A DNA stretch of 64,000 bases from Salpingoeca rosetta (Eukaryota; Protista; Choanoflagellata): NCBI GenBank assembly GCA_033442325.1, contig JAWQFM010000006.1, positions 439,628 to 503,627 of the forward strand, in the 5' to 3' direction. Each line of letters begins with the position of its first letter. The stretch's first letter is position 1. The notes under the pieces were generated by a model. It was given only the letters and a program-made list of their open reading frames with translations, searched no databases and was not told the DNA's origin. Positions 36,723 to 64,000 of this stretch are shown here, in pieces. The translations under genes and the position numbers were made by a program.

Positions 36723-44103
<7,381 letters not shown>

Positions 44104-50839: not shown

Positions 50840-53254
50840 CACAAACAAACACACACGCACAAACAAACACGTGCACGCAAGGCTGGTGAGCACAGAGCGA
50901 GCAATGCTGTTTGGATGTGTATGGGTACAAGTCGAGAATGACTGAGCACAGAGGTGTTGAACATAAAGGCAACTCACGCTGTTGTGAATGTTGCGTTCAA
51001 TCGGGTGACACATGCGCATGGACTGGCGCTGCGTATCCACCCTGGTGAAGAAGAGCACACGCAGGGGTGGTGGGGGTCGAGGGGTGACATTCGTCCAGCA
51101 GACGTGCATCGCAGACAACAAGATAGAGTGACAAAGAGAGGTGATTGTCCCCAAAACACACACACACATGCACACGTCAAGCAGGCGTCAAGCAGGCGTC
51201 GAGGGTCAACGCGCTGATGAGCACCGCAACAGACACCCACGTTTCCACGCCACGAACCCGACATGTGCACACACGTACATCCACAATGTGTCGAGCGGGC
51301 GCTTGCGAGTGGTGTCCTTGGAGCGGAGATAGAGATCATGCACAATCAATCGCTCCTCCTCCGTCGGCGGCTGGCGGTGCACAGACTGCTCCCGCTCGCG
51401 CTGTACACGCGTGGTGGATGATATTGTTGGTGGTGTTGGCGTCAGTGATTGGTGTTAGGGTTGTTGTGTATGTGTGTGTATGTGTGTGTATGTGTGTGGT
51501 TGAAGCAGAGCAACGCTATGAGTGTGTGTGTGCGTGCGTGAGAGAGAGAGGTAGGCAGGCAGCCGGCGTGCATCCTGCTGTGATGCGGTACCTTTCTGAC
51601 ACGCTTGTTGTGCTCGCCGAGTTTCATGATCTCCTCCTCCTCTGGTGTTGTTGCCTTGAGCTTGTTCACGGGGTACGCTGACTTGGTCACGGGATCGCGC
51701 GCCACCATCGTGAACGTGGCAACCTGAACGCCAACCACACAGCAAGCGCACACGCGCACATGTGAGTGTGGAGGAAGGGCGGGGTTGCGTACATGTAAGC
51801 TGCTTGTGCAGCACACATCAAACTACCACACGTGTCCCTCTCCAACTCAACCGCGTGTGACTTGCTTGCTTCCTTCAAACAGTGCGTGCAAAGTGCCTTG
51901 TTTGTACCATGACTTTGTCGCGCTCCTCTGGTGCCGTGTCGCTGTCTGTGTCAACGGTCACAGATATTTCCATGGAAGACGAACCGACGTACGACACGTG
52001 TCCAAACATGCGGTAGTCCCTTCCACATGGATAAAAAGGTGTGCGTGTGTGTTAATGTGCGCGCATGTGTGTGCGTGCGTGCGTGTGTGTGTGCGTGCAT
52101 GTGTGTGTGCGTGCATGTGTGTGTGTGTGTATTTGTGTGTGTGTGTNNNNNNNNNNNNNNNNNNNNNNNNNNNNNNNNNNNNNNNNNNNNNNNNNNNNNN
52201 NNNNNNNNNNNNNNNNNNNNNNNNNNNNNNNNNNNNNNNNNNNNNNNNNNNNNNNNNNNNNNNNNNNNNNNNNNNNNNNNNNNNNNNNNNNNNNNNNNNN
52301 NNNNNNNNNNNNNNNNNNNNNNNNNNNNNNNNNNNNNNNNNNNNNNNNNNNNNNNNNNNNNNNNNNNNNNNNNNNNNNNNNNNNNNNNNNNNNNNNNNNN
52401 NNNNNNNNNNNNNNNNNNNNNNNNNNNNNNNNNNNNAGCAAGGGACCAAGCAAGCCAAAGCCAGCAAGGGTTACCTGCTTGCCGCAGTGCTTGAGGAGGG
52501 TGATGCGGTCAACGGATGCAGTGACGATAGTCAGGGGACCGTAGTGGGTCGTGTCGTCACAGTGGCGATAGGCGATGGTGCCGGCGAGGGCATCCAGGTC
52601 CTCCAGAATCTTTCCGACGCGGATGGAGCCTGCATAGGTCAGGTATTCTTCCTGCAGTAACTTGTCTGTGGAGAATGGCAGGCACACCTCCGTGTAGCTG
52701 TCAGCCATGGTCTTTGTCAAGACCTGGGACGGCTTGTGGGCATCCTCCTTTGTGATGGAATTGCGTGCGCGCCACAACTTGTTGGTGATACTGGACCTCT
52801 ATATGTGTGTATGCGTGTGTATGCGTGTGTATGCGTGTGTATGCGTGTGTATGTGTGTGTATGTGTGTGTATGTGTGTGTATGTGCGTGTATGTGCGTGT
52901 ATGTGTGTTTATGTGTGTTTGCAACGAAAGCTGCGGCAAGGTGTGCTCACCAGCATTCACACACGCGCGCGCACGCACACACGCGCACACACACTCACAC
53001 GCACACACTCACACACACACTCACACACTCACACGCACACACTCACACACACACGCACAACTACCACTAGCAAGCCGCACCGGTCGAACTTCTCCGAGGA
53101 CAGAAGCCAGGTCGTCTCTTGAGGAGGAAAGCGAAGCCGATGGCGAGGAGGAGAGGAGCCGCACACCGGCCACACGAGCAACGGCCGCGGTCTGCTGACG
53201 ATGCCGAAGCACCACTCCAGCAACAGCCCGCAATCCACCACCCGCAACCATCAT
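49805..53254 (-). CDS. ACOT9: Mitochondrial double-hotdog acyl-CoA thioesterase (ACOT9-like)
   Basis: Arg/Ser/Ala-rich targeting peptide; [55 protein letters not shown]|[50 protein letters not shown]. Confidence 0.9.
52147..52436. other. Assembly gap (290 N) inside ACOT9; may hide a small exon
   Basis: N run. The flanking exons appear phase-incompatible: phase-0 donor after ..KHCGKQ, but the next exon starts one base before the DYRMFGH codons. Confidence 0.8.
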
Positions 53255-53615: not shown

Positions 53616-54082
53616 TCACGATTCCGAATGTCCAACCCCTTCTGGGTCCTCCTCCTCCTCCTCCTCACCACCACCACCATCACCATCATCATCATCGTCG
53701 TCATCCTCACCACCACCACCATCACCATCACCATCAGCAGCGCTCGCACACGCTGGTGTTTTGAACTGCAGATGATACAGCTCTGATATCTATACGAGAA
53801 GAGATCCATCAGCGCAGCGCAGCACAGCACACAGACATTTGCGACGGTGAGGAAGCAGCTTTTTTTGACAGCAAACGCAAGCAAACCACGCACACACAAG
53901 CAGTGGCGAAACCATGCACACACGCTCTGGCACTCTTCATACTTGTGTGGAGGTTGTCGCCTCCTCCGGTGTCTTGTCCTCTCGCTTGCGGATGAACCTG
54001 GCAGCACAACAACCACACCTCAGCTGTGAGAATGATGCAGTGCAGCAGCGCGGTGCAAGCGCAGCAAGGCCACCACCCCCCC

Positions 54083-54117
<35 letters not shown>

Positions 54118-54871
54118 CGTCTGTCATGTACCCAAGAGCACAGAGCTAGATGCAGATTATGCACATTGCGCCTCTCCCCACCTGCCGAAAGCTGTCACAA
54201 CAGTGCAGCATCGCATTACACAGAGCATGACCACCACCACCACCACCACCACCACCACCACCACCACCACAGTGCTACCAACGCACCGCGGGAAGCGCAG
54301 GGAAATGCCTGCACCAGGTCGATCTGCAACAGCGCCCCTGGCGGCGGTGTGCGCTGGCGACGCCGTAAAGTCGGCTCCCTTGATCTCCCACACCTGATCG
54401 GAGTGAAAGCACAGGCAGACGCGCACAAACTTGTGAAGTCGCTGAACACGCAGCAGTGAGTAAAGCAGCAGGCGGCAACGGGTTGCACGCAGCGAGAGGG
54501 ACAGATTGAAACTGCGCAAGCACGACTGCGCAAGCACACACACGCACACACACACACAGACGCAAACTAGCAGACACACCTCGACCGAGTCAAACCAGAC
54601 GCTGGGCGACATTTGGGCGCTGACGTCGTAGTAGCTTCGCTTGGCGTCAATGACATGCTTCTCTTTGAACAGTGCCGTTGTCGTCTTGTAAAACTCGTCC
54701 GTGAACCCAGACATCACCTTCAATACCAAGTGTGAAGGAGCAGGCGAGAGACAGGGGGGGGGGGTGTAGACATGTTGCAGCATCAGCACGGAGTGATTAG
54801 TACAGGTAACTGCACAGCAAGCAACCACAACAAAGGCAAAAAAAACCGCAAACAAGCACACACACATACAC

Positions 54872-54956
<85 letters not shown>

Positions 54957-55898
54957 AAACACCAACCTTGCAAACGGATTGATAGGTCTCTGTTTCTTCG
55001 TCATAGCAGGCGAGGAGGAAAGGGGAGAACCAGCCTGCCTTGCGGCCGTTGCCCCACCACGCGCCAATCACAACCAAATCAAGGCTGTCGCTCAACCCTT
55101 CCACGTAGTCTTTCTTCACCTGTCACAACACACGGCCACAAAACCACAACACACGGCCAAAATATGCTATGAACGCGTGCATATGATTACAGCGACTCAT
55201 GCTCAGCTGTGCCAACAGCATATGCTCTCTTGCCAATGCTTACGGAAAGTGGAGTGCAATGCACACCCACACATACACATACGCATACACACACACACAC
55301 ACACCACAGAACAACGAACACGATTCCCAAGCAAAGGTGACCAGTGAGTGGCACAGACCTTGAGCCAGTTTTCGCAGCGCTTGGATGGTTGATATGTGGA
55401 GAGGGCATACAAGTCGTCGCTGTCACTGCCTTGATTCTTGACAGTCTTCTTTCCGTGGGACGTGGTGGCTGCAAACACATGCACAAGTAGGAAAGGTAAG
55501 CAGATGTTTTCTGTCCCTGCAAGCATACCTAAAGCACTTGCACGCACAGAGTTGTACCGAAAACACACCAAACGTACACACATGTACACACGTACACACA
55601 CACACACACACACATGTACACACACGTACACACACACACACACACGTACACACACACACACACACGTACGCACACACACACACGCGTGCATAAACAAAGG
55701 CACACGTACTGTCGTCTGCTGCTGGGATCATTTCAGGACCAAGTACCTTAATCATCAATCCTTCGCACCTGTTGTGGCAGGCAGTTGTGCCAGAGCATGC
55801 TCGAGTGTGATTGGCTGGTGGCGGATGCAGGTGACCGCGCACGTGCAATAGCAGACGCTTAGTTGCAATCGACATGGGATGCCGCAACTGCAAGCAGA

Positions 55899-55946
<48 letters not shown>

Positions 55947-55965
55947 ACACACACACAGACACACA

Positions 55966-56012
<47 letters not shown>

Positions 56013-57179
56013 GCACACAAAACAACACACGCGTACTTGGCATCGAGAGCAGCGTGCAGGAACTCGCGCAAGGGCTGTGGGCTGTGTGAGCCATCGGGTT
56101 TGCACTGAAACGTTTTGGCCGTGACCAGCTGCAATCGGTTGGGAAGCATTGTGAACGTGTCTTGCAGCAGCTTCCGCCGGAGTCTGTGGACACACGTCGC
56201 CATGAACACATGTAATCAAAACAGTGAGGTGACATGTGGGCCTGGGCGAAGCCAGTGAAATGACCACCCGCAATAGTGCAAAGCGCCCACATGTCAGCAC
56301 GTCCCACCCCTTCAGCGAAAGTGAAACACCGCGTGTACCTGAACGGGTGCTTGAGTAACGACGCGCCGTTGTGATGCATGATGTCAAACAGGTGGACGCG
56401 CACGCGAATGGACACGGAGCTGCCATCGACATTCTTGCGCGCGCGGTTCATGAGCGTCTGAAACGGAAGCATGGTCCCGTCCTCCGTCACCGCAACAATC
56501 TCCGCATCTGATGACCACGACAACAGAGGCGGTGACAATGATGATGACGATGATGATGACGATGATGATGACGATGATGATGATGATGACGATGATGGAG
56601 GGGATGACAGCAAACGGCACGGTCCGGTGCAAGGTCGGAGAACGACGAGGCAAGGTGCGTGTATCCGTGTTGGGTATGTGTGATTGTCACGAACAACACG
56701 CAATCCACCCAACACACATTTGGCCACATCCACGAATCCATGCAGTGCTCAGCACGTACACACACACACACACAGACACACACACACACACAGACACACA
56801 CACACACAGACACACACAGACACACACACACACACACACGAATACACACACGTACCAAGAACGCAGCTTGAGATGGCCAAGGCATTGCTATCGCCATCAA
56901 CAGCCAGTGCATCCAGAACGCTTTCAAGCGCGTCCGGGTAGCGGTCCGTCATATTCTCCAAGTGGCGGCTGAACATGTGCAGCGTGGCTGCGGACCTGAT
57001 GCGTGGACGTGGGCACAGCACATGTGGGGGGGGGGATGGGAGGGTTGAATCGGTGGCTAGTGCGACGAAGCTGTCACTTGAAACGTAACTTGCAGACAAC
57101 TGGGCAGACACAAGATATGTGCATGCACACGCACACACAAACACAAACACAAACACAAACAAACAAACAAACAAACAAA

Positions 57180-57220
<41 letters not shown>

Positions 57221-57691
57221 CAGCAGACCTTTGTCTGGTGGGAGCGTCAATGTGAATCTGCGCACGCACACCGTCGTATTTGAATTCCGCCTGGAAGTTT
57301 TTTCCGCGCAGCCGCTCCAAAGCATCGGCGAGATCGCGTGTGATTTTTCCGAGCATGGGGCGTACGGGGACGCCCGGGTGTGCCTGCGTTCGCGCCGCAA
57401 GCTCATCAAAGCACCCGGGACTCAGCAGCGCACTTGTGGTTGGTTGGACGATGGTACATGTGCATGTGTGCGGGAGGAGAAGGGAGGGAGAAGGAGTGTG
57501 AGTGTCAGCATGGTGGCGCGGTGTTGTGACAAAAGTATGGGCAAGATGGGTGCGGGTGCGTTGGTTGGGGGTTCGAGTACAGCAACACATGCACTGAACC
57601 CACGTAACAAGCAGACAAGTAACAGATAAAACAGATGTTGTTACACACAGTGAACTCCCCCCCCCCCAAACACGCACACACAAACACGCAC

Positions 57692-57753
<62 letters not shown>

Positions 57754-57757
57754 ACAA

Positions 57758-57813
<56 letters not shown>

Positions 57814-58206
57814 ACAGCGCAACGCGACTTTATACGCTATGTGTGGCTCACGTGAGGATGGTTTCCCAGCACGGGTGCCGCGCGTACGCGTCCTTGACAC
57901 GCTGTGCAGCCTCATCGGGTGCAATGTGCGTTTGGCGTCGGTACTCGCGGATTGCGTGGCCGACAGCGACCTGCAGCGTCAGTCCAACAGCACCGATGCG
58001 CAAATTTGCTGGGCGAATATCAAGTTGTGTGTGTGTGTGTGTGTATGTGTGTGTGTGTGTGTGAAGTGGTGTTGGAGGATGTGTTGTGCGAGAGGAGCCC
58101 GGACAAGCATCCCAGCACATATTCGCACACGTACAAGCCTGCTCATAGATGAATGCACAAATCAAACCAGGCAAGGAGAAAGCGATTCACGAAACCACAG
58201 GCATTC

Positions 58207-58246
<40 letters not shown>

Positions 58247-58275
58247 CTTAAACAACAACAACAACAACAACAACT

Positions 58276-58324
<49 letters not shown>

Positions 58325-58820
58325 CTTAAACAACAACAACTTAAACAACAGCAGCAACAGCAGCAGGAAATGGGCCGTACAGATGAGGGTTCTGACGAGG
58401 AATCGGATCTCGGGCCCGCGACAGCTCACGAGCAGTTTGTGCACGAGCGCTTGCTTCTGCTTCACTGATCCCGGGCCCTTCATTACCGCGATGCGGTGAA
58501 GATCACGGAAGAGCGCTGGCGGCGTGAGGAGACACAAGACAAGGCGTGACAACATGGCAAGGATGAGAAAAGAACGGCGGAAGAAGGCCGAGAAAAGAAA
58601 TCAACGGGGTGAAGCGTGGAAAGCGTGTCATCCATCAAGCCACTCGACTTGTTCTCCTCCTCCCACCGCTCCGATCATTGCGCTGCTGCCACCGTACCTT
58701 TGATCTGGAGCGGTCTTGGCCGAAAGAGGGTGCGCACGCTTGATCGCGCCTTGAAGGCGACGTCCCCCAAATCGCCCAATTCCTTGTAATCGCTGCGCAT
58801 TTGCTGACGCGATCGCCCTG

Positions 58821-58868
<48 letters not shown>

Positions 58869-59271
58869 ATACAGAGAGAGGTGTGTCAACTCTTGTGCGT
58901 ACACGATATCAAGCCCACCACGCGTGGCAGAGAACAAACACGGGGCGTTGCACAAGAACGAAGGAAATCATCACTCGCAGGTGCATCGAGCACCACTCCA
59001 CCACCCCATCGCTCCATCACACCATCGGTCTACATGACCGCTGCAGCGTCCCGCGTGTTTTGGTTCTCACACCTGTTGCGGTGCGGACGGCAGCTGCAAC
59101 CAGGCGCTCGCCAATACCCAGCTCGACGTTGCGGTAGGAGGGCGCAATGCTGTTGGTTGACAGATACACAGTCGCAATTAGCGCCTCGGTGTCAGGGGTG
59201 CCTGCAAGCAATGGTGATGGTGATGTGATGATTGCGACAAGCACATGAGCGCTTAGAATTCATCGTACACT

Positions 59272-59306
<35 letters not shown>

Positions 59307-60777
59307 CGAGGCTCTACCAACACACGTGCATACGGAAGCAGCAGCACGTGTGCACGCGTGTGCTCGAGCCTCACCATCCGGCTTCTCTGTTGTGGTGAGC
59401 ACCGTGCACAGCATCGTCTTGAGCAGCTCTGTAATCTTCAGCCGCGATTTCGTCTTTAACATCTCCTCGAATGTCGATGCAATCACCAAATACTCGCAGT
59501 CCTCAGATGTTGTTGCTGTCGTTGTTGCTGTTGATGCTGCTGTCGTTGTTGTTGGCGTTCCGCTGGTAAGTGCTGCTGTCATATGGCTTGTCATTGGTTC
59601 GCGCTTGACTCCAGGCGCCGTTGCGTCTGTTGCTGGTGTTGACGCTGGAAGCGTGTCTTGGTGTATCGCATCACCACCGCCACCATTTGTCGAATCATGT
59701 GCGTCATCATCGCTGTCAATCAACAGCACGTCCCCCTCACCCATCGACAGCCGTCTTGCTGTTGGCTGTGCTCTTTCTTCAGCACCGCTTGTGTTCGTTC
59801 TCTCAACTGCTCTGGTTTCGGCTGCTGCCGTACTCGTCGTGCTCTTGGGCGATTTTCGCTTGCGTGGTGAAAGCCATCGAGTCAGCGTCATCTGGCAGCA
59901 ACCACCGTGTGTGCGTGTGTGCATGTGTGCATGAGAGCGTGTTGAACCATGTTTGTGATGCTGAGCATGAAAGCATGCACATGCGCGTGCAGGTTGCCAG
60001 CTAATACCAAGGGCATCATCGTACCTGAGCAGCGCCCGCATCCTTTTGTTTCTTCGCTCGATGCCGGTTCTTGCCACCGCCACTCCTGCTGCCTTGCTTG
60101 ATGCCCTTGTTGCTGCTGCTGCTGGTGCTGGTGCTGGTGCTGGTGCTCGTGGTGGTGGTGGTGGTGCTGCTGCTGCTGCTGGTGGTGGTGGTGCTGGTGC
60201 TGCTTGCGGTGATGTTGGACGTTCCACTGTCCAGTAGGATGTTGACTGCCTTCTCTGCATCCCCGCCACTTGCCGCCAGCGCTGCTGCAATCGCTTTTCG
60301 CTGCGTGAACACAACAGCAAGCAGCGCGTAAGTACGATGTGTGGTGTGGCGCTTGCAGTGCGCTGTACACTGCATGTGTGCATGCGTGTATGTGTGTGTT
60401 TGGACATGTGCACATGTTTGCGCATTGTGTGCAGGCCTCACCGAGACGTCAGCGCCAAGAAGAGCCTGAATGCGACACACGGATTCATCTGACGAACGAC
60501 AGTACACAGCAGCGCATACGTGTGTGAGCACAGTTAGGGGTGGGCTGATATACGCGCCAGTGTGGACACGTGCATAATGGGACACACAACGCCGAACAAG
60601 CAACGATGCAGGGTTCCACACAACAATCATAAGCCTGACCTGTCGCAGGTGCGGGACGGCCATCAGTTGCGTCCTGCTGCGACTCTGCACTAGCGTCGTC
60701 ACCGCCGCTTTTATCATGCTGAGCACCACCATTCCTTGCTCGATCATCATCGTCGTCATCATCGATGATCATCAACA

Positions 60778-60810
<33 letters not shown>

Positions 60811-63800
60811 TACCACCACCCTCAATATAGTTGCCACCATCATCGTCAGTGTTCTCCCGTTTGGGCCGCTTCTGTGTGGGATTATCGCTTTCGTGCGCTG
60901 ATACTCCGCTAGGCCGTCCTGGTAACGTATACACATGCGCACCAACACATACGCGTTCATGCAGGTGAGAGGAGGGTTAGCGTATGTTGAATTGGCTTGG
61001 GCTGCACTAATCTCCACAGAGCGTCGCTCTGCACCCGTATACACACACACAGCACACATAAGCACACACATACACACGCATACACACGCATACACACACA
61101 CACACACACAGAGCTGCTGGGGAGCATGTGAAGATCACCGAGCATGGACGCGAGAAAGTTGCGCGATGCGGCCTTCTTGTCGATCAAATCATCAAAGTGC
61201 GAGCAGATTTTGGCGTATAGGCGCGCCTTGTTCGAGCTTCGCCCGCCGCCTGAGGCGGCACCACCGCCAGCGCATGCACGTGCACGTGCGCATATGTATG
61301 TGATGTTTGCGAATGACATTGGGCGTGTGTACGTGAGCGAATTCGAACACTGCAGACACAGACAGACAGAGAGACACACAAGCATACACACAGACACACA
61401 GACACACAGACACACAGACACACAGACACACAGACACACAGACACACACCAGCACGCACGCACGCACGCACACACGCACGCACGCACGCACGCACACAGA
61501 CAGACACAGAGAGACATACAACCACACACACATACACACACCAGCACACACACACACACACACACACATAAGCACACGCACACACACACACACACACACC
61601 TATGACTGTTGGGACGACACGCGCAGGCTTGAGCCAGGCGACAAATTCCCTGAGCTCGAGGTAATTGCTGTGCTCGGAATACGGCACCGTGAAGACCGTG
61701 ACGTTCCGCTTGGTTTCCTTGTGGTGCAGCACGCCAAGCACCTCTTCGTCTGGTGGTGTTGGCGTTGTTGGTGAGCAGTCACGGTGGTGGGGGTAGTGGG
61801 GCGGGGTGGTGGTGGAAGAGAAGGGTGTGAGACATGTGACAAAGTGGGGTTGGGGTGAGGCAAGAATGAGGCTGAGAGCAGATTCAATCACCGACACGTA
61901 TGCATGAGCAGAGCAGCTTACACATGCAACAAATAGATTCGCCTTCACGCACACATAGATATGCACACGCACACATACAGATATACACGACGGCTGGACG
62001 CACCGTGCTGGGCGAGTGCCTGGCGACGCTGGTGTTCTTTCGCAATGACATATGTCCAACCCGTTGGCACAAACGCGACAATTCGGTGATATCTGCAACA
62101 GAAAGATAACCAATGTACCGCGTCAGCTTGAGGGACACGTGAGCACGCACATCAAGCACACGAGGATGTACACACACTCGCAGATCCACACACCCACAAA
62201 GTCACAACAACCATTGCTCTCTCCACACACACACACACACTCGCACATGCACACACACGCACACGCACACACACGCACACGCACACGCACACACACACAC
62301 TCGCACATGCACACACACGCACACACACACACACATCACCTTGGCTTGTAGTGGTCAATCATGTCATGCAACGTTTCGTAATCTGGCAGAAACGTCCACC
62401 CACCGGCGGCCATTGTGCCCAGCATGTGCCACCCCACCACGTGCACGTTGCTCGCCTTGTGCCCAGCATGTGCCACCCCACCACGTGCACGTTGCTCGCC
62501 TTGGTTGCACACGCACACACACGCACACACACGCATCTCCAAGGCGAAACAAAGTCACAACTCAGTCCAATAAACATGAGCGTCAGTCACAGCGACAATG
62601 GCCGCAGCGCTTACGAGGTGGTCAGAGGTGAACATTTCGTCGAATGGCACGGGCCAGTCAAGATCAAGTTGCTGCATCATGAGCCGCTTCTTCTCAGACA
62701 CAACCTAAACATGCATACACACCCAGGGAGACAATTGTACACCACCCACCCACAAACAAACATGCACAAACCACAACACACACACACACACACACACAAA
62801 ACGCACGCACACACGTGTCTGTGAGAAGAGTGCAGGGCACGACACCAACTCTTACAGGCCTCGATGAATCGCTACAAACGCGAGTGAAAGCAGGCCAAGC
62901 GGGCTGTGGGTGACGTATGACGCACCAGTGGCTTGTGCTGGTCTTTGACAAGTTGTGTGAGGATCTTTTCTTTCCCGACGGAATATGTGGCCACCAGAAA
63001 CAGGGTATCTGTATCCAAGCAGTTGAGTGCAAAGCATGGAGCGTGCATGAGAACACCTTCAGGCTCCCGTTCGCTCACTTTCGAGCATACGCGTGTCAAC
63101 GTGCCTGGCACGATGCCAAGTGTCGAAAGCACAATTAACAGTCAGGCTGCCAATATAGCAACCCGCAATCTCACAAAAACATCCAGGGCACACAAGATGT
63201 ACACACACAAACACACACACGCAGACAGACACACAGACACACACACAGACACATACGTAGACACATGTACGCATTTGACGAACCGACACCGTCGGCTCTT
63301 TGCTGGTCCTCGTGCATGTATTGCGAGACCGTGTCAGAAACAAAGCGAACAACTTGCTCCTGTGGCGGGAACGTGTGCTTGGGATCGCAATATGTTGTGT
63401 CCAAGAATAAGATGTCAAGGGCCACGTTCTGCAGGAGGGGGTGTTGTTTCCATGCAGGGGTATAGCGACAATCCCCAGAGTGAAGGTACCAATGCTCCAA
63501 GCCACCCTCTGTTTCTACACAGGGCAGACACACAAACAACGGCAGGCGTTGCAGATGAGGAGCACGGGAACATCAAGCCGAAAGGAGAATCGTGCTCAGC
63601 TGCTTCGCGAAGCAATTGACAAAGAGCACTCACCCCCCCCCCCAATCACAATTCATGCGCGGAAGTGTGTGTGTGTGTGTGTGTATTCTCGCACGTATTT
63701 GCCCATTGCCAAGGAAAAAAAAAGCATCGGCAACCAGCCCACCTCTGACATGGAAGAGAAACATGGCTGCGCCTGGGCAGTGGTTGGCGTCGATGAGGGC

Positions 63801-64000
63801 CACTCGGCAAGTGGCGGTGACGTCCACCCAGGTATCCAGTGGCAGTGGACGCAGGTAGTTTGCGTCGACCTCCAACACAGCGGCCACTAACTTGGCCGTT
63901 GTTTGGGAGCAATAAACGGGACCCCACTGCCAGTCCTTGTTCAGCTTCCCGTAGTGGTCTGCGTGGAAGTGGGACAGGAAGAACAGGGTGCCGGATTCCC
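53616..64000 (-). CDS. LIG6: DNA ligase VI-like fusion: SNM1/Pso2-type metallo-beta-lactamase beta-CASP nuclease + UBA-like + ATP-dependent DNA ligase; 5' end outside the window
   Basis: Nuclease motifs FLSHFHADHY, IDANHCPGA, LHSGDCRY, LFLDTTYC, LVATYSVGKEKIL, VHVVGWHMLG, FVPTGW, VPYSEHSNYLELREFV. Ligase motifs KSRLKI, GDLGDVA, PVRPML, AEFKYDGVRAQIH, CEGLMIK, YQPSKRCENWLK|VKKDY, DLVVIGAWWGNGRKAGWFSPFL, VWEIKGAD, SLRFPR|FIRKREDK. Last exon 53789-53616 ISELYHLQ plus an acidic tail. Confidence 0.88.
58206..58350 (-). repeat. Intronic compound (TTG)n microsatellite with TTTAAG interruptions (same motif as 13271-13456)
   Basis: Plus strand caacaacTTAaacaacaac units. Confidence 0.85.
62413..62502 (-). 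repeat. Exact 44-bp tandem duplication spanning a 3' splice site of the LIG6-like gene
   Basis: ttgtgcccagcatgtgccaccccaccacgtgcacgttgctcgcc occurs at 62413 and again at 62457. Confidence 0.9.

What the first reader, a model, noticed from the sequence alone, without database searches (positions are those of the whole stretch)
53616..64000. 'Plant-specific' DNA ligase VI architecture (beta-CASP nuclease fused to ligase) in an apparent choanoflagellate
Seen: one spliceable gene carries intact SNM1-type catalytic motifs (HFHADH, DANHCPG, GD, LDTTY, YSEHS) and an intact ligase adenylation motif (EFKYDG). Known: this fusion defines plant LIG6, which is usually described as plant-specific; animals encode SNM1/Artemis nucleases and ligases separately. 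Signatures LFLVATYxVGKEKIL, VHVVGWxxLG, GAWxGNGRKAGWxSPFL and VMSGF match what I recall of plant LIG6 rather than LIG1. Inference: either an ancient eukaryotic cut-and-seal repair enzyme lost in animals, or an algal gene transfer. The many native-style introns suggest long residence.
Basis: partly seen in the sequence, partly recalled or inferred. Interest (0 to 1): 0.75.

Follow-up and report, generated by a model that had tools for sequence, protein, structure and literature searches.

The report
LIG6-type nuclease-ligase gene in choanoflagellate
This is a real, intact choanoflagellate gene that joins a DNA-trimming nuclease to a DNA-sealing ligase in one protein, the 'DNA ligase 6' design that the literature calls plant-specific. 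Other single-celled relatives of animals have it too, early fungi carry the two halves as separate genes, and animals appear to have lost it.

Summary
A minus-strand gene runs from window 53619 to 64070, so its start codon lies 70 nt past the window end. It has 27 exons and 26 GT-AG introns. It encodes exactly the public 1437-aa model P0001: an SNM1-type nuclease, a UBA-like linker domain and a three-domain ATP-dependent ligase. All catalytic motifs are intact.

The same architecture occurs in transcript-derived ORFs of Choanoeca flexa, C. perplexa and Salpingoeca infusionum. It also occurs in Monosiga (partial), Capsaspora, Pigoraptor and Corallochytrium, and in green plants and algae.

In domain trees both halves fall in LIG6-type clades. 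These are distinct from LIG1 (100/100) and from fungal Pso2-type nucleases (92/88). Within those clades the holozoan sequences group with fungal stand-alone ligases and chytrid stand-alone nucleases, outside a monophyletic green clade.

AU tests reject an origin inside chlorophytes (7e-20 for the ligase, 6e-4 for the nuclease). They also reject an origin from opisthokont LIG1 (5e-90) or Pso2 (0.006). Ancient inheritance is therefore favoured over algal transfer. No animal member was found.

I found no paper reporting LIG6 outside plants, but the gene model is already public. This is a new member of a known kind, of moderate interest.

The parts
53616..64000 (-). LIG6-type gene. The CDS runs from 64070 to 53619, with the TGA stop at 53618-53616. 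It has 27 exons. The first 70 nt of exon 1 lie beyond the window end.
   Evidence: Exon map with all 26 introns GT-AG; translation identical to public protein P0001. The start codon was read in L002.
61242..64000 (-). SNM1-type metallo-beta-lactamase/beta-CASP nuclease domain, aa 1-365, exons 1-8 (to aa 365).
   Evidence: Aligns over the whole catalytic domain of human SNM1A at E 3e-56, versus Apollo 1e-34 and Artemis 5e-10. DRMBL scores 86 bits.
63954..63971 (-). Metal-binding motif 2, HFHADH (HxHxDH).
63771..63791 (-). Motif 3, DANHCPG.
61667..61681 (-). Beta-CASP motif B, YSEHS.
62417..62446 (-). VHVVGWHMLG. The W..LG signature is specific to LIG6-type nucleases.
   Evidence: Present in holozoan fusions, chytrid stand-alone nucleases and green LIG6. 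Absent from Pso2/SNM1 rows.
59493..61241 (-). Low-complexity linker, aa 366-733. It holds two acid-flanked hydrophobic stretches that look like SUMO-interaction motifs (aa 447-458 and 655-663).
   Evidence: Sequence read. The SUMO-interaction reading is inference only.
60226..60643 (-). UBA-like domain, aa 492-533. It is spread over exons 9-11.
   Evidence: PF24559 UBA_RAD5A scores 28.5 bits against a cut-off of 27 when the linker is scanned alone. Plant LIG6 (Brachypodium) has UBA_4 at 32.5 bits in the same place.
57968..59492 (-). Ligase DNA-binding domain (DNA_ligase_A_N, aa 734-914). It begins inside exon 12, which also encodes the end of the linker.
55747..57359 (-). Ligase adenylation domain (DNA_ligase_A_M, aa 978-1180). 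The motif I lysine lies in EFKYDG at 57287-57270.
53973..55038 (-). Ligase OB-fold domain (DNA_ligase_A_C, aa 1257-1370), with motif VI LRFPRFIRKREDK.
62414..62501 (-). Two tandem copies of a 44-nt unit. The unit comprises the acceptor AG plus the first 42 nt of exon 5.
   Evidence: Only the downstream AG (exon 5 start at 62455) keeps the reading frame.

Best explanation
This is a single, intact, intron-rich nuclear gene of a choanoflagellate, very probably Salpingoeca rosetta. It encodes a DNA ligase 6 (LIG6) family enzyme.

Architecture: an N-terminal SNM1-type 5'-3' exonuclease, a UBA-like ubiquitin-binding module in a long acidic linker, and a complete LIG1-like three-domain ATP-dependent DNA ligase.

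Likely mechanism (inferred from the families, not shown here). The linker module brings the enzyme to ubiquitin-marked damage sites. The nuclease trims damaged or cross-linked 5'-phosphorylated ends. After gap filling by a polymerase, the ligase of the same polypeptide seals the nick. This is a 'cut-and-seal' repair enzyme.

Evolution. The gene was inherited vertically within Opisthokonta from an old eukaryotic LIG6 lineage shared with green plants. The fusion persists in unicellular Holozoa, is split into two genes in chytrid fungi, and is apparently lost in animals.

In this genome it is the only SNM1A/Pso2-like nuclease that I could find.
For: Gene reality.
- 27 exons and 26 GT-AG introns encode exactly the public 1437-aa model.
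- Exon 12 encodes both the linker end and the ligase start.
- A single BLASTP alignment with the transcript-derived Choanoeca perplexa ORF covers 97% of the protein.
- Complete transcriptome ORFs with DRMBL plus ligase N/M/C domains exist in C. flexa (1488 aa), C. perplexa (1471 aa) and S. infusionum (1800 aa).

Catalytic competence. All SNM1 and ligase motifs are aligned to human SNM1A (3e-56) and LIG1 (1e-108).

Family.
- Ligase tree: LIG1 versus the LIG6 family is supported at 100/100. Holozoa plus fungal stand-alone ligases are supported at 96/93. The same topology appears with PMSF quick trees.
- Nuclease tree: the LIG6-type clade has 92/88. Green plants have 100/99, Holozoa 96/84, and fungal Pso2 forms a separate clade at 99/94.
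- AU tests reject holozoa plus opisthokont LIG1 (5e-90), holozoa plus chlorophytes (7e-20 for the ligase, 6e-4 for the nuclease) and LIG6-type opisthokont nucleases plus Pso2 (0.006).
- A UBA-like linker domain is shared with plant LIG6.

Split state in fungi. Spizellomyces has the nuclease P0021 and the ligase P0280 on different contigs. Rhizophlyctis has P0412 and P0279.

Paralogues in this genome. It has a separate LIG1 (C10) and two other ligase loci. Its other DRMBL genes are an Apollo-like gene (C16) and a weak hit on C7. A fungal Pso2 query finds only this gene plus that weak C7 hit.
Against: - There are no RNA data for this species.
- Two choanoflagellate transcriptomes (Hartaetosiga, 914 aa; Stephanoeca, 1159 aa) give ligase-only ORFs. 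These may be truncated assemblies or real short isoforms.
- Support for the LIG6-type nuclease clade (92/88) and for opisthokont monophyly in the nuclease tree (82/54) is moderate.
- The trees are unrooted with respect to archaeal ligases. The position of the LIG1 branch within the LIG6 family is not fixed: holozoa next to LIG1 is not rejected (p 0.13).
- The careful PMSF ligase search did not finish.
- Absence from animals rests on hit lists capped at 120.
- No biochemical function has been tested. Even for plant LIG6, I did not find nuclease activity reported in the papers I read.
Confidence: 0.8

Rival explanations
1. Convergent or repeated fusion. The ancestor had two separate partner genes, a LIG6-type nuclease and a LIG6-type ligase, as chytrids have today. 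These genes fused independently in the holozoan and green-plant lineages.
For: - Chytrids carry both halves as separate, unlinked genes.
- Galdieria has a ligase-only member.
- Fungal stand-alone ligases show no UBA remnant at their N-termini.
- One environmental fusion (P0044) has a nuclease that does not fall in the LIG6-type clade, so fusions of this kind can arise more than once.
Against: - The domain order is the same, and a UBA-like module sits in the same linker position in plants and holozoans.
- One fusion followed by fission in fungi needs fewer events among the sampled groups.
- Both domain trees give the same grouping.
Confidence: 0.15
2. Horizontal transfer of a ready-made LIG6 gene from a green alga, or another alga, into an ancestor of choanoflagellates.
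For: - Choanoflagellates eat algae, and algal HGT into them has been reported (titles and abstracts of PMC4046809 and PMC7971027).
- LIG6 is richest in Viridiplantae.
Against: - Green sequences are monophyletic and exclude all holozoans in both trees (100/99 for the nuclease, 93/98 for the ligase).
- A clade of holozoa plus chlorophytes is rejected by AU tests (7e-20 and 6e-4).
- The fusion is also found in Filasterea and Corallochytrium, and the holozoan ligases group with fungal ones (96/93).
- The gene has 26 native-style introns rich in (TG)n repeats, as elsewhere in the window.
- The two HGT papers do not mention a ligase or nuclease in their main text.
Confidence: 0.04
3. Annotation chimera. 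Two adjacent genes, an SNM1-like nuclease and a ligase, are transcribed separately, and the public model and the reader merged them.
For: - There is no RNA evidence for this species.
- The linker is long and low-complexity.
- Ligase-only ORFs exist in two other choanoflagellate transcriptomes.
Against: - The reading frame is uninterrupted through 27 exons with canonical splice sites.
- Exon 12 carries both linker and ligase codons.
- The introns between exons 8 and 12 are only 133-220 nt long, which leaves no room for a terminator plus a promoter.
- De novo transcript ORFs from three other species contain both halves.
- The alignment to the C. perplexa ORF spans 97% of the protein, linker included.
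Confidence: 0.04

Closest known systems
Plant DNA ligase 6 (AtLIG6 and orthologues in land plants and green algae)
   Same: - The order of parts is the same: N-terminal SNM1-type nuclease, UBA-like linker domain, three-domain ATP-dependent ligase.
- Identity is 32-40% with up to 96% coverage, at E about 1e-190 to 1e-200.
- Both halves fall in the same clades.
- Diagnostic signatures are shared.
   Different: - The choanoflagellate protein branches with other opisthokont sequences, outside the green clade.
- Its nuclease starts at residue 1, without the 40-120-aa N-terminal extension of plant proteins.
- Its linker is much more acidic and rich in Ser/Thr.
- Known plant phenotypes (seed longevity, mild X-ray sensitivity; PMC3198793, PMC12586901) have no counterpart here.
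Fungal stand-alone LIG6-type ligases and chytrid stand-alone LIG6-type nucleases. The ligases occur in chytrids, Basidiomycota and Histoplasma, and may be the family of S. pombe Adl1; that name is from memory and was not tested.
   Same: - They are the nearest relatives of each half. Ligase: 96/93 with Holozoa. Nuclease: chytrid clade at 100/100, sister to the holozoan fusions.
- They carry the same signatures.
   Different: - The two activities are encoded by separate, unlinked genes.
- The chytrid nuclease is named as UBZ4-type by its source (a weak ubiquitin-binding zinc-finger Pfam hit), not a UBA.
- No UBA was detected in the fungal ligases.
Animal SNM1A (DCLRE1A) plus DNA ligase 1, as separate proteins
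   Same: - These are the best solved-structure matches: SNM1A at 3e-56 and LIG1 at 1e-108.
- All catalytic residues align.
   Different: - They are separate genes, and SNM1A carries its catalytic domain at the C-terminus.
- Phylogenetically they are paralogues, not orthologues. The LIG1 versus LIG6 split is 100/100, and the AU test gives 5e-90.
- This genome has its own LIG1 on contig C10.
Bacterial Lig B gene cluster (Lhr helicase, MPE nuclease, ATP-dependent ligase, SNM1B/Apollo-like exonuclease), and Verrucomicrobiota proteins combining RMMBL and ligase domains
   Same: They also couple a beta-CASP-type nuclease with an ATP-dependent ligase, either as neighbouring genes (PMC7470946) or in single proteins (ESM Atlas clusters).
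   Different: - They are prokaryotic, and the relationship was seen only by language-model features. No alignment or tree was made.
- The eukaryotic ligase half is clearly LIG1-like.
- This is analogy, or very distant kinship at most.

Membership tests
DNA ligase 6 (LIG6) | N-terminal SNM1/beta-CASP nuclease domain with intact metal-binding and beta-CASP motifs | tested here: met
   DRMBL scores 86 bits. The full-domain alignment to SNM1A gives 3e-56. HxHxDH, DANHCPG, GD, LDTTY and YSEHS are present.
DNA ligase 6 (LIG6) | C-terminal DBD, adenylation and OB domains with motifs I-VI | tested here: met
   Pfam A_N, A_M and A_C are all above their cut-offs. The alignment to LIG1 gives 1e-108, and motifs I, III, IIIa, IV, V and VI are kept.
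DNA ligase 6 (LIG6) | Both activities in one polypeptide from one mRNA | tested here: inconclusive
   There is one continuous spliced frame, and full-length transcript ORFs exist in three sister species. No RNA data were obtained for this species.
DNA ligase 6 (LIG6) | Ligase half groups with LIG6 ligases, not with LIG1 | tested here: met
   The split is supported at 100/100. The AU test rejects a clade with opisthokont LIG1 at p 5e-90. Signatures GRKA..W.SP and MSGF are present.
DNA ligase 6 (LIG6) | Nuclease half groups with LIG6 nucleases, not with SNM1A/Pso2 | tested here: met
   The clade has 92/88 (PMSF) and 93/90 (LG+G4). The AU test rejects union with fungal Pso2 at p 0.006. The W..LGE signature is present. 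Support is moderate.
DNA ligase 6 (LIG6) | UBA-like domain between nuclease and ligase | tested here: met
   PF24559 scores 28.5 bits against a cut-off of 27 at aa 492-533. Plant LIG6 has UBA_4 at 32.5 bits.
DNA ligase 6 (LIG6) | Exonuclease and ligase activities; a role in repair of breaks or cross-links | not testable with these tools
   Needs protein biochemistry and a knockout.
DNA ligase 1 (replicative ligase) | Orthology to LIG1 | tested here: not met
   A separate LIG1 locus lies on C10. Known LIG1 proteins match C10 about twice as strongly as they match this gene. See also the tree and AU test.
SNM1A/Pso2 | Orthology to the stand-alone cross-link repair nuclease, which has a C-terminal catalytic domain and an N-terminal UBZ/PIP region | tested here: not met
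   The nuclease sits at the N-terminus and lies outside the Pso2 clade (99/94). No PIP box or UBZ4 was found by pattern search.

The most novel reading that the evidence does not exclude
The nuclease-UBA-ligase enzyme LIG6 is not a plant invention. It is an ancestral eukaryotic repair machine that was already fused in the common ancestor of opisthokonts and green plants. It was later split in fungi and discarded on the animal stem. In choanoflagellates it replaces a stand-alone SNM1A/Pso2, so that cross-link or dirty-end processing and sealing are done by one polypeptide.
Probability: 0.5. Interest if true: 0.6.

Novelty: new member of a known kind. Interest (0 to 1): 0.45.

Why it matters
LIG6 is treated in the literature as a plant-specific ligase, and general ligase reviews list only Lig I, III and IV for eukaryotes. 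Three results change that picture:
- The two halves survive as separate genes in early fungi.
- No animal copy was found.

Together these re-date the family to an early eukaryotic ancestor and add one more gene to the list lost at the origin of animals.

The finding also offers a fast-growing, genetically tractable unicellular model (genome editing in S. rosetta: PMC7314544, title). In that model one can ask what the fused nuclease contributes. None of the plant papers I read reports a test of the nuclease.

The split and fused states are a classic 'Rosetta stone' argument that the fungal stand-alone ligase and nuclease work together.

Tried and rejected
- **Joined spliced model.** Searches used exon references or the stored public protein P0001. 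The exons were joined only inside scripts: to place the junctions, and to compare their translation with P0001, which was identical.
- **Odd intron.** An apparent 44-nt AT-AC intron in my first exon map was an artefact of a 44-nt tandem duplication. Using the downstream AG gives a normal GT-AG intron.
- **Acropora P0113.** This 1141-aa protein with an N-terminal nuclease looked like an animal LIG6. It has two DRMBL domains and no ligase, and it groups with the Apollo-like S. rosetta C16 gene.
- **Orbicella and Trichobilharzia ligases** are LIG1.
- **Fimicolochytrium.** The neighbours of its stand-alone nuclease include no ligase.
- **Prokaryotic relatives.** The scan of prokaryotic genomes with the ligase half gave one irrelevant weak hit.
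- **Careful PMSF ligase tree.** It was still unfinished at the last of three runs (715 s on the tool's counter). I report the PMSF quick tree and the LG+G4 careful tree instead.
- **AU test of holozoa plus all LIG1.** It was not rejected (p 0.13). I judged it uninformative for the question, because it only moves the attachment point of the LIG1 branch.
- **Literature.** Searches for LIG6 together with choanoflagellates, Capsaspora, Adl1, DRMBL or LECA found nothing. The two choanoflagellate HGT papers do not mention ligases or nucleases in their main text; their supplements were not read.

Full report
**Observation**

The region holds one minus-strand gene. Six-frame ORFs show the conserved pieces. 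Reading the strand gives HFHADH and DANHCPG in the first exon. The window is G000:C6:439628-503627 of a 55.4-Mb, 68-contig genome. Fetching the next 6 kb showed that the ORF of exon 1 starts with ATG 70 nt beyond the window end. A divergently oriented poly(A)-binding-protein-like ORF lies about 0.5 kb further on.

Exon-by-exon Pfam scans hit DRMBL, DNA_ligase_A_N, A_M and A_C in the expected order.

An exhaustive HMMER search with exon 1 (L002:372-698:-) returned a 1437-aa protein, P0001, that is 100% identical over the exon. It is the window's own public gene model, held by NCBI, UniRef and EukProt. A script mapped it onto the DNA. The result is 27 exons, 26 GT-AG introns of 133-419 nt, and a translation identical to P0001.

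All searches used exon references or P0001.

**Anatomy**

Pfam on P0001 gives the following:
- DRMBL at 237-362
- A UBA-like domain at 492-533 (PF24559, 28.5 bits when the linker is scanned alone; cut-off 27)
- DNA_ligase_A_N at 734-914
- A_M at 978-1180
- A_C at 1257-1370

The nuclease aligns over the whole catalytic domain of human SNM1A at 3e-56, versus Apollo at 1e-34 and Artemis at 5e-10. Every metal-binding and beta-CASP motif is present.

The ligase aligns with human LIG1 at 1e-108, versus LIG3 at 2e-33 and LIG4 at 3e-24. Motifs I, III, IIIa, IV, V and VI are kept.

The linker is acidic and rich in Ser/Thr. It has two acid-flanked hydrophobic stretches that resemble SUMO-interaction motifs. 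That reading is inference only.

**Is it one gene?**

The indirect evidence is good:
- The frame is continuous.
- The introns between the last nuclease exon and the first ligase exon are only 133-220 nt long.
- Exon 12 encodes both the linker end and the first 40 residues of the ligase domain.
- De novo transcriptome ORFs marked complete carry DRMBL plus all three ligase domains in Choanoeca flexa (1488 aa), C. perplexa (1471 aa) and Salpingoeca infusionum (1800 aa).
- The C. perplexa ORF aligns to 97% of P0001 in one local alignment.

Two other species gave ligase-only ORFs: Hartaetosiga (914 aa) and Stephanoeca (1159 aa, with a weak UBA hit). These may be truncated assemblies or short isoforms.

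**Distribution**

The same architecture occurs in:
- Monosiga brevicollis (partial model)
- Capsaspora owczarzaki (XP_004364857.2, 1575 aa)
- Pigoraptor chileana
- Corallochytrium limacisporum
- Several unnamed environmental proteins
- Land plants ('DNA ligase 6') and green algae, at E about 1e-190 to 1e-200

With the ligase half alone, the nearest non-fusion proteins are stand-alone ligases of chytrids (Rhizophlyctis, Spizellomyces, Gonapodya, Paraphysoderma), Basidiomycota and Histoplasma. True LIG1 proteins follow.

With the nuclease half alone, the nearest proteins are stand-alone nucleases of chytrids (Fimicolochytrium, Thoreauomyces, Rhizophlyctis, Synchytrium, Spizellomyces). Plant SNM1 follows.

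Spizellomyces and Rhizophlyctis thus have both halves as separate genes. In Spizellomyces they lie on different contigs, and in Fimicolochytrium no ligase lies next to the nuclease.

No metazoan sequence fell in either LIG6-type group:
- Orbicella and Trichobilharzia ligases are LIG1.
- Acropora P0113 is a tandem-DRMBL, Apollo-like protein.
- The Nematostella fragment lacks the LIG6-type W..LGE signature.

**Phylogeny of the ligase half**

The data set had 44 rows and 623 columns. Under LG+G4 with ultrafast bootstrap and SH-aLRT, the supports are:
- LIG1 versus the LIG6 family: 100/100
- Holozoa plus fungal stand-alone ligases: 96/93
- Fungi: 100/99
- Choanoflagellates: 99/99
- Viridiplantae: 93/98

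PMSF quick trees on 68 and 44 rows give the same groups.

AU tests reject holozoa plus chlorophytes (p 7e-20) and holozoa plus opisthokont LIG1 (p 5e-90).

**Phylogeny of the nuclease half**

The data set had 43 rows and 342 columns, analysed with a PMSF careful search. The supports are:
- LIG6-type clade: 92/88. It is made of Viridiplantae (100/99) and an opisthokont group (82/54).
- Within the opisthokont group: holozoan fusions 96/84 and chytrid stand-alone nucleases 100/100.
- Fungal Pso2: a separate clade at 99/94.

AU tests (LG+G4) reject LIG6-type opisthokont nucleases plus Pso2 (p 0.006) and holozoa plus chlorophytes (p 6e-4).

Alignment signatures agree with the trees.

**Limits of the trees**

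- There is no archaeal outgroup.
- The nuclease clade has only moderate support.
- The careful PMSF ligase run did not finish.

**Paralogues in this genome**

There are four ligase loci: this gene, LIG1 on C10, and two more on C2 and C9. There are three DRMBL loci: this gene, an Apollo-like 1255-aa ORF on C16, and a weak hit on C7.

A fungal Pso2 query finds only this gene plus the weak C7 hit. The fusion therefore seems to be the organism's only SNM1A/Pso2-like nuclease.

**Interpretation**

The gene is a bona fide LIG6-family member. Both halves and the UBA-like linker domain are shared with plant LIG6. The branching of both halves follows the species tree, with opisthokonts against green plants. 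The gene is full of introns typical of this genome.

This favours old vertical inheritance, with fission in fungi and loss in animals, over algal transfer. Independent fusion of two ancestrally separate partner genes cannot be excluded; I put it at about 0.15.

The mechanism is inferred from the families: ubiquitin-guided recruitment, 5'-3' trimming of damaged ends, and sealing by the same polypeptide.

**Comparison with what is known**

The literature in the held library calls LIG6 plant-specific (PMC3198793). Every DNA-ligase LIG6 paper among the 40 listed of 49 hits concerns plants. Two ligase reviews do not mention it for eukaryotes. I found no paper on LIG6 in holozoans or fungi.

The gene model and its domain hits are, however, already in public databases.

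Bacterial Lig B clusters with an Apollo-like exonuclease are an analogous coupling (PMC7470946). So are the Verrucomicrobiota RMMBL-ligase proteins.

That fits the 55-Mb size and the tree position.

**Verdict**

This is a new member of a known kind, of moderate interest.

Noticed in passing
window 62414-62501 (minus strand): There is a perfect 44-nt tandem duplication covering the 3' splice-site AG and the first 42 nt of exon 5. It creates two acceptors 44 nt apart. Only the downstream one keeps the frame, and use of the upstream one would shift it. It could be a real polymorphism, a source of unproductive splicing, or an assembly artefact.
   Followed up: partly
window 53790-63742 (introns of the gene): 17 of the 26 introns contain a pure (TG)n or (CA)n run of at least 12 nt, up to 78 nt. 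Dinucleotide microsatellites therefore mark most introns and none of the exons.
   Followed up: partly
L002:1176-3566 (+), about 0.5-3 kb beyond the window end: A divergently transcribed ORF of about 796 aa looks like a poly(A)-binding protein. Its start lies about 0.5 kb from the LIG6-type gene's ATG, which suggests a shared bidirectional promoter region.
   Followed up: no
G000:C16:227134-230898 (L017:2134-5898, minus): A single 1255-aa open frame encodes an Apollo/SNM1B-like nuclease (best PDB match Apollo, 3e-19). No stand-alone SNM1A/Pso2 gene was found in the genome.
   Followed up: partly
proteins P0021 + P0280 (Spizellomyces) and P0412 + P0279 (Rhizophlyctis): Chytrid fungi carry the LIG6-type nuclease and the LIG6-type ligase as separate genes. 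Dikarya in the sample show only the ligase half. This split state seems undescribed.
   Followed up: partly
proteins P0044, P0393, P0380, P0383, P0384 (environmental, unnamed): A divergent, long-branched group of LIG6-family ligases, two of them (P0044, P0393) with DRMBL. P0044 adds RanBP zinc fingers, and its nuclease does not fall in the LIG6-type clade, which hints at a second, independent nuclease-ligase fusion.
   Followed up: no
ESM Atlas clusters: Verrucomicrobiota protein clusters combine RMMBL (beta-CASP) and ATP-dependent ligase domains. They are a prokaryotic counterpart of the same domain pairing.
   Followed up: no
window 52147-52436 and 39837-39936: Runs of N (assembly gaps). The first lies about 1.2 kb downstream of the gene's stop codon.
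   Followed up: no
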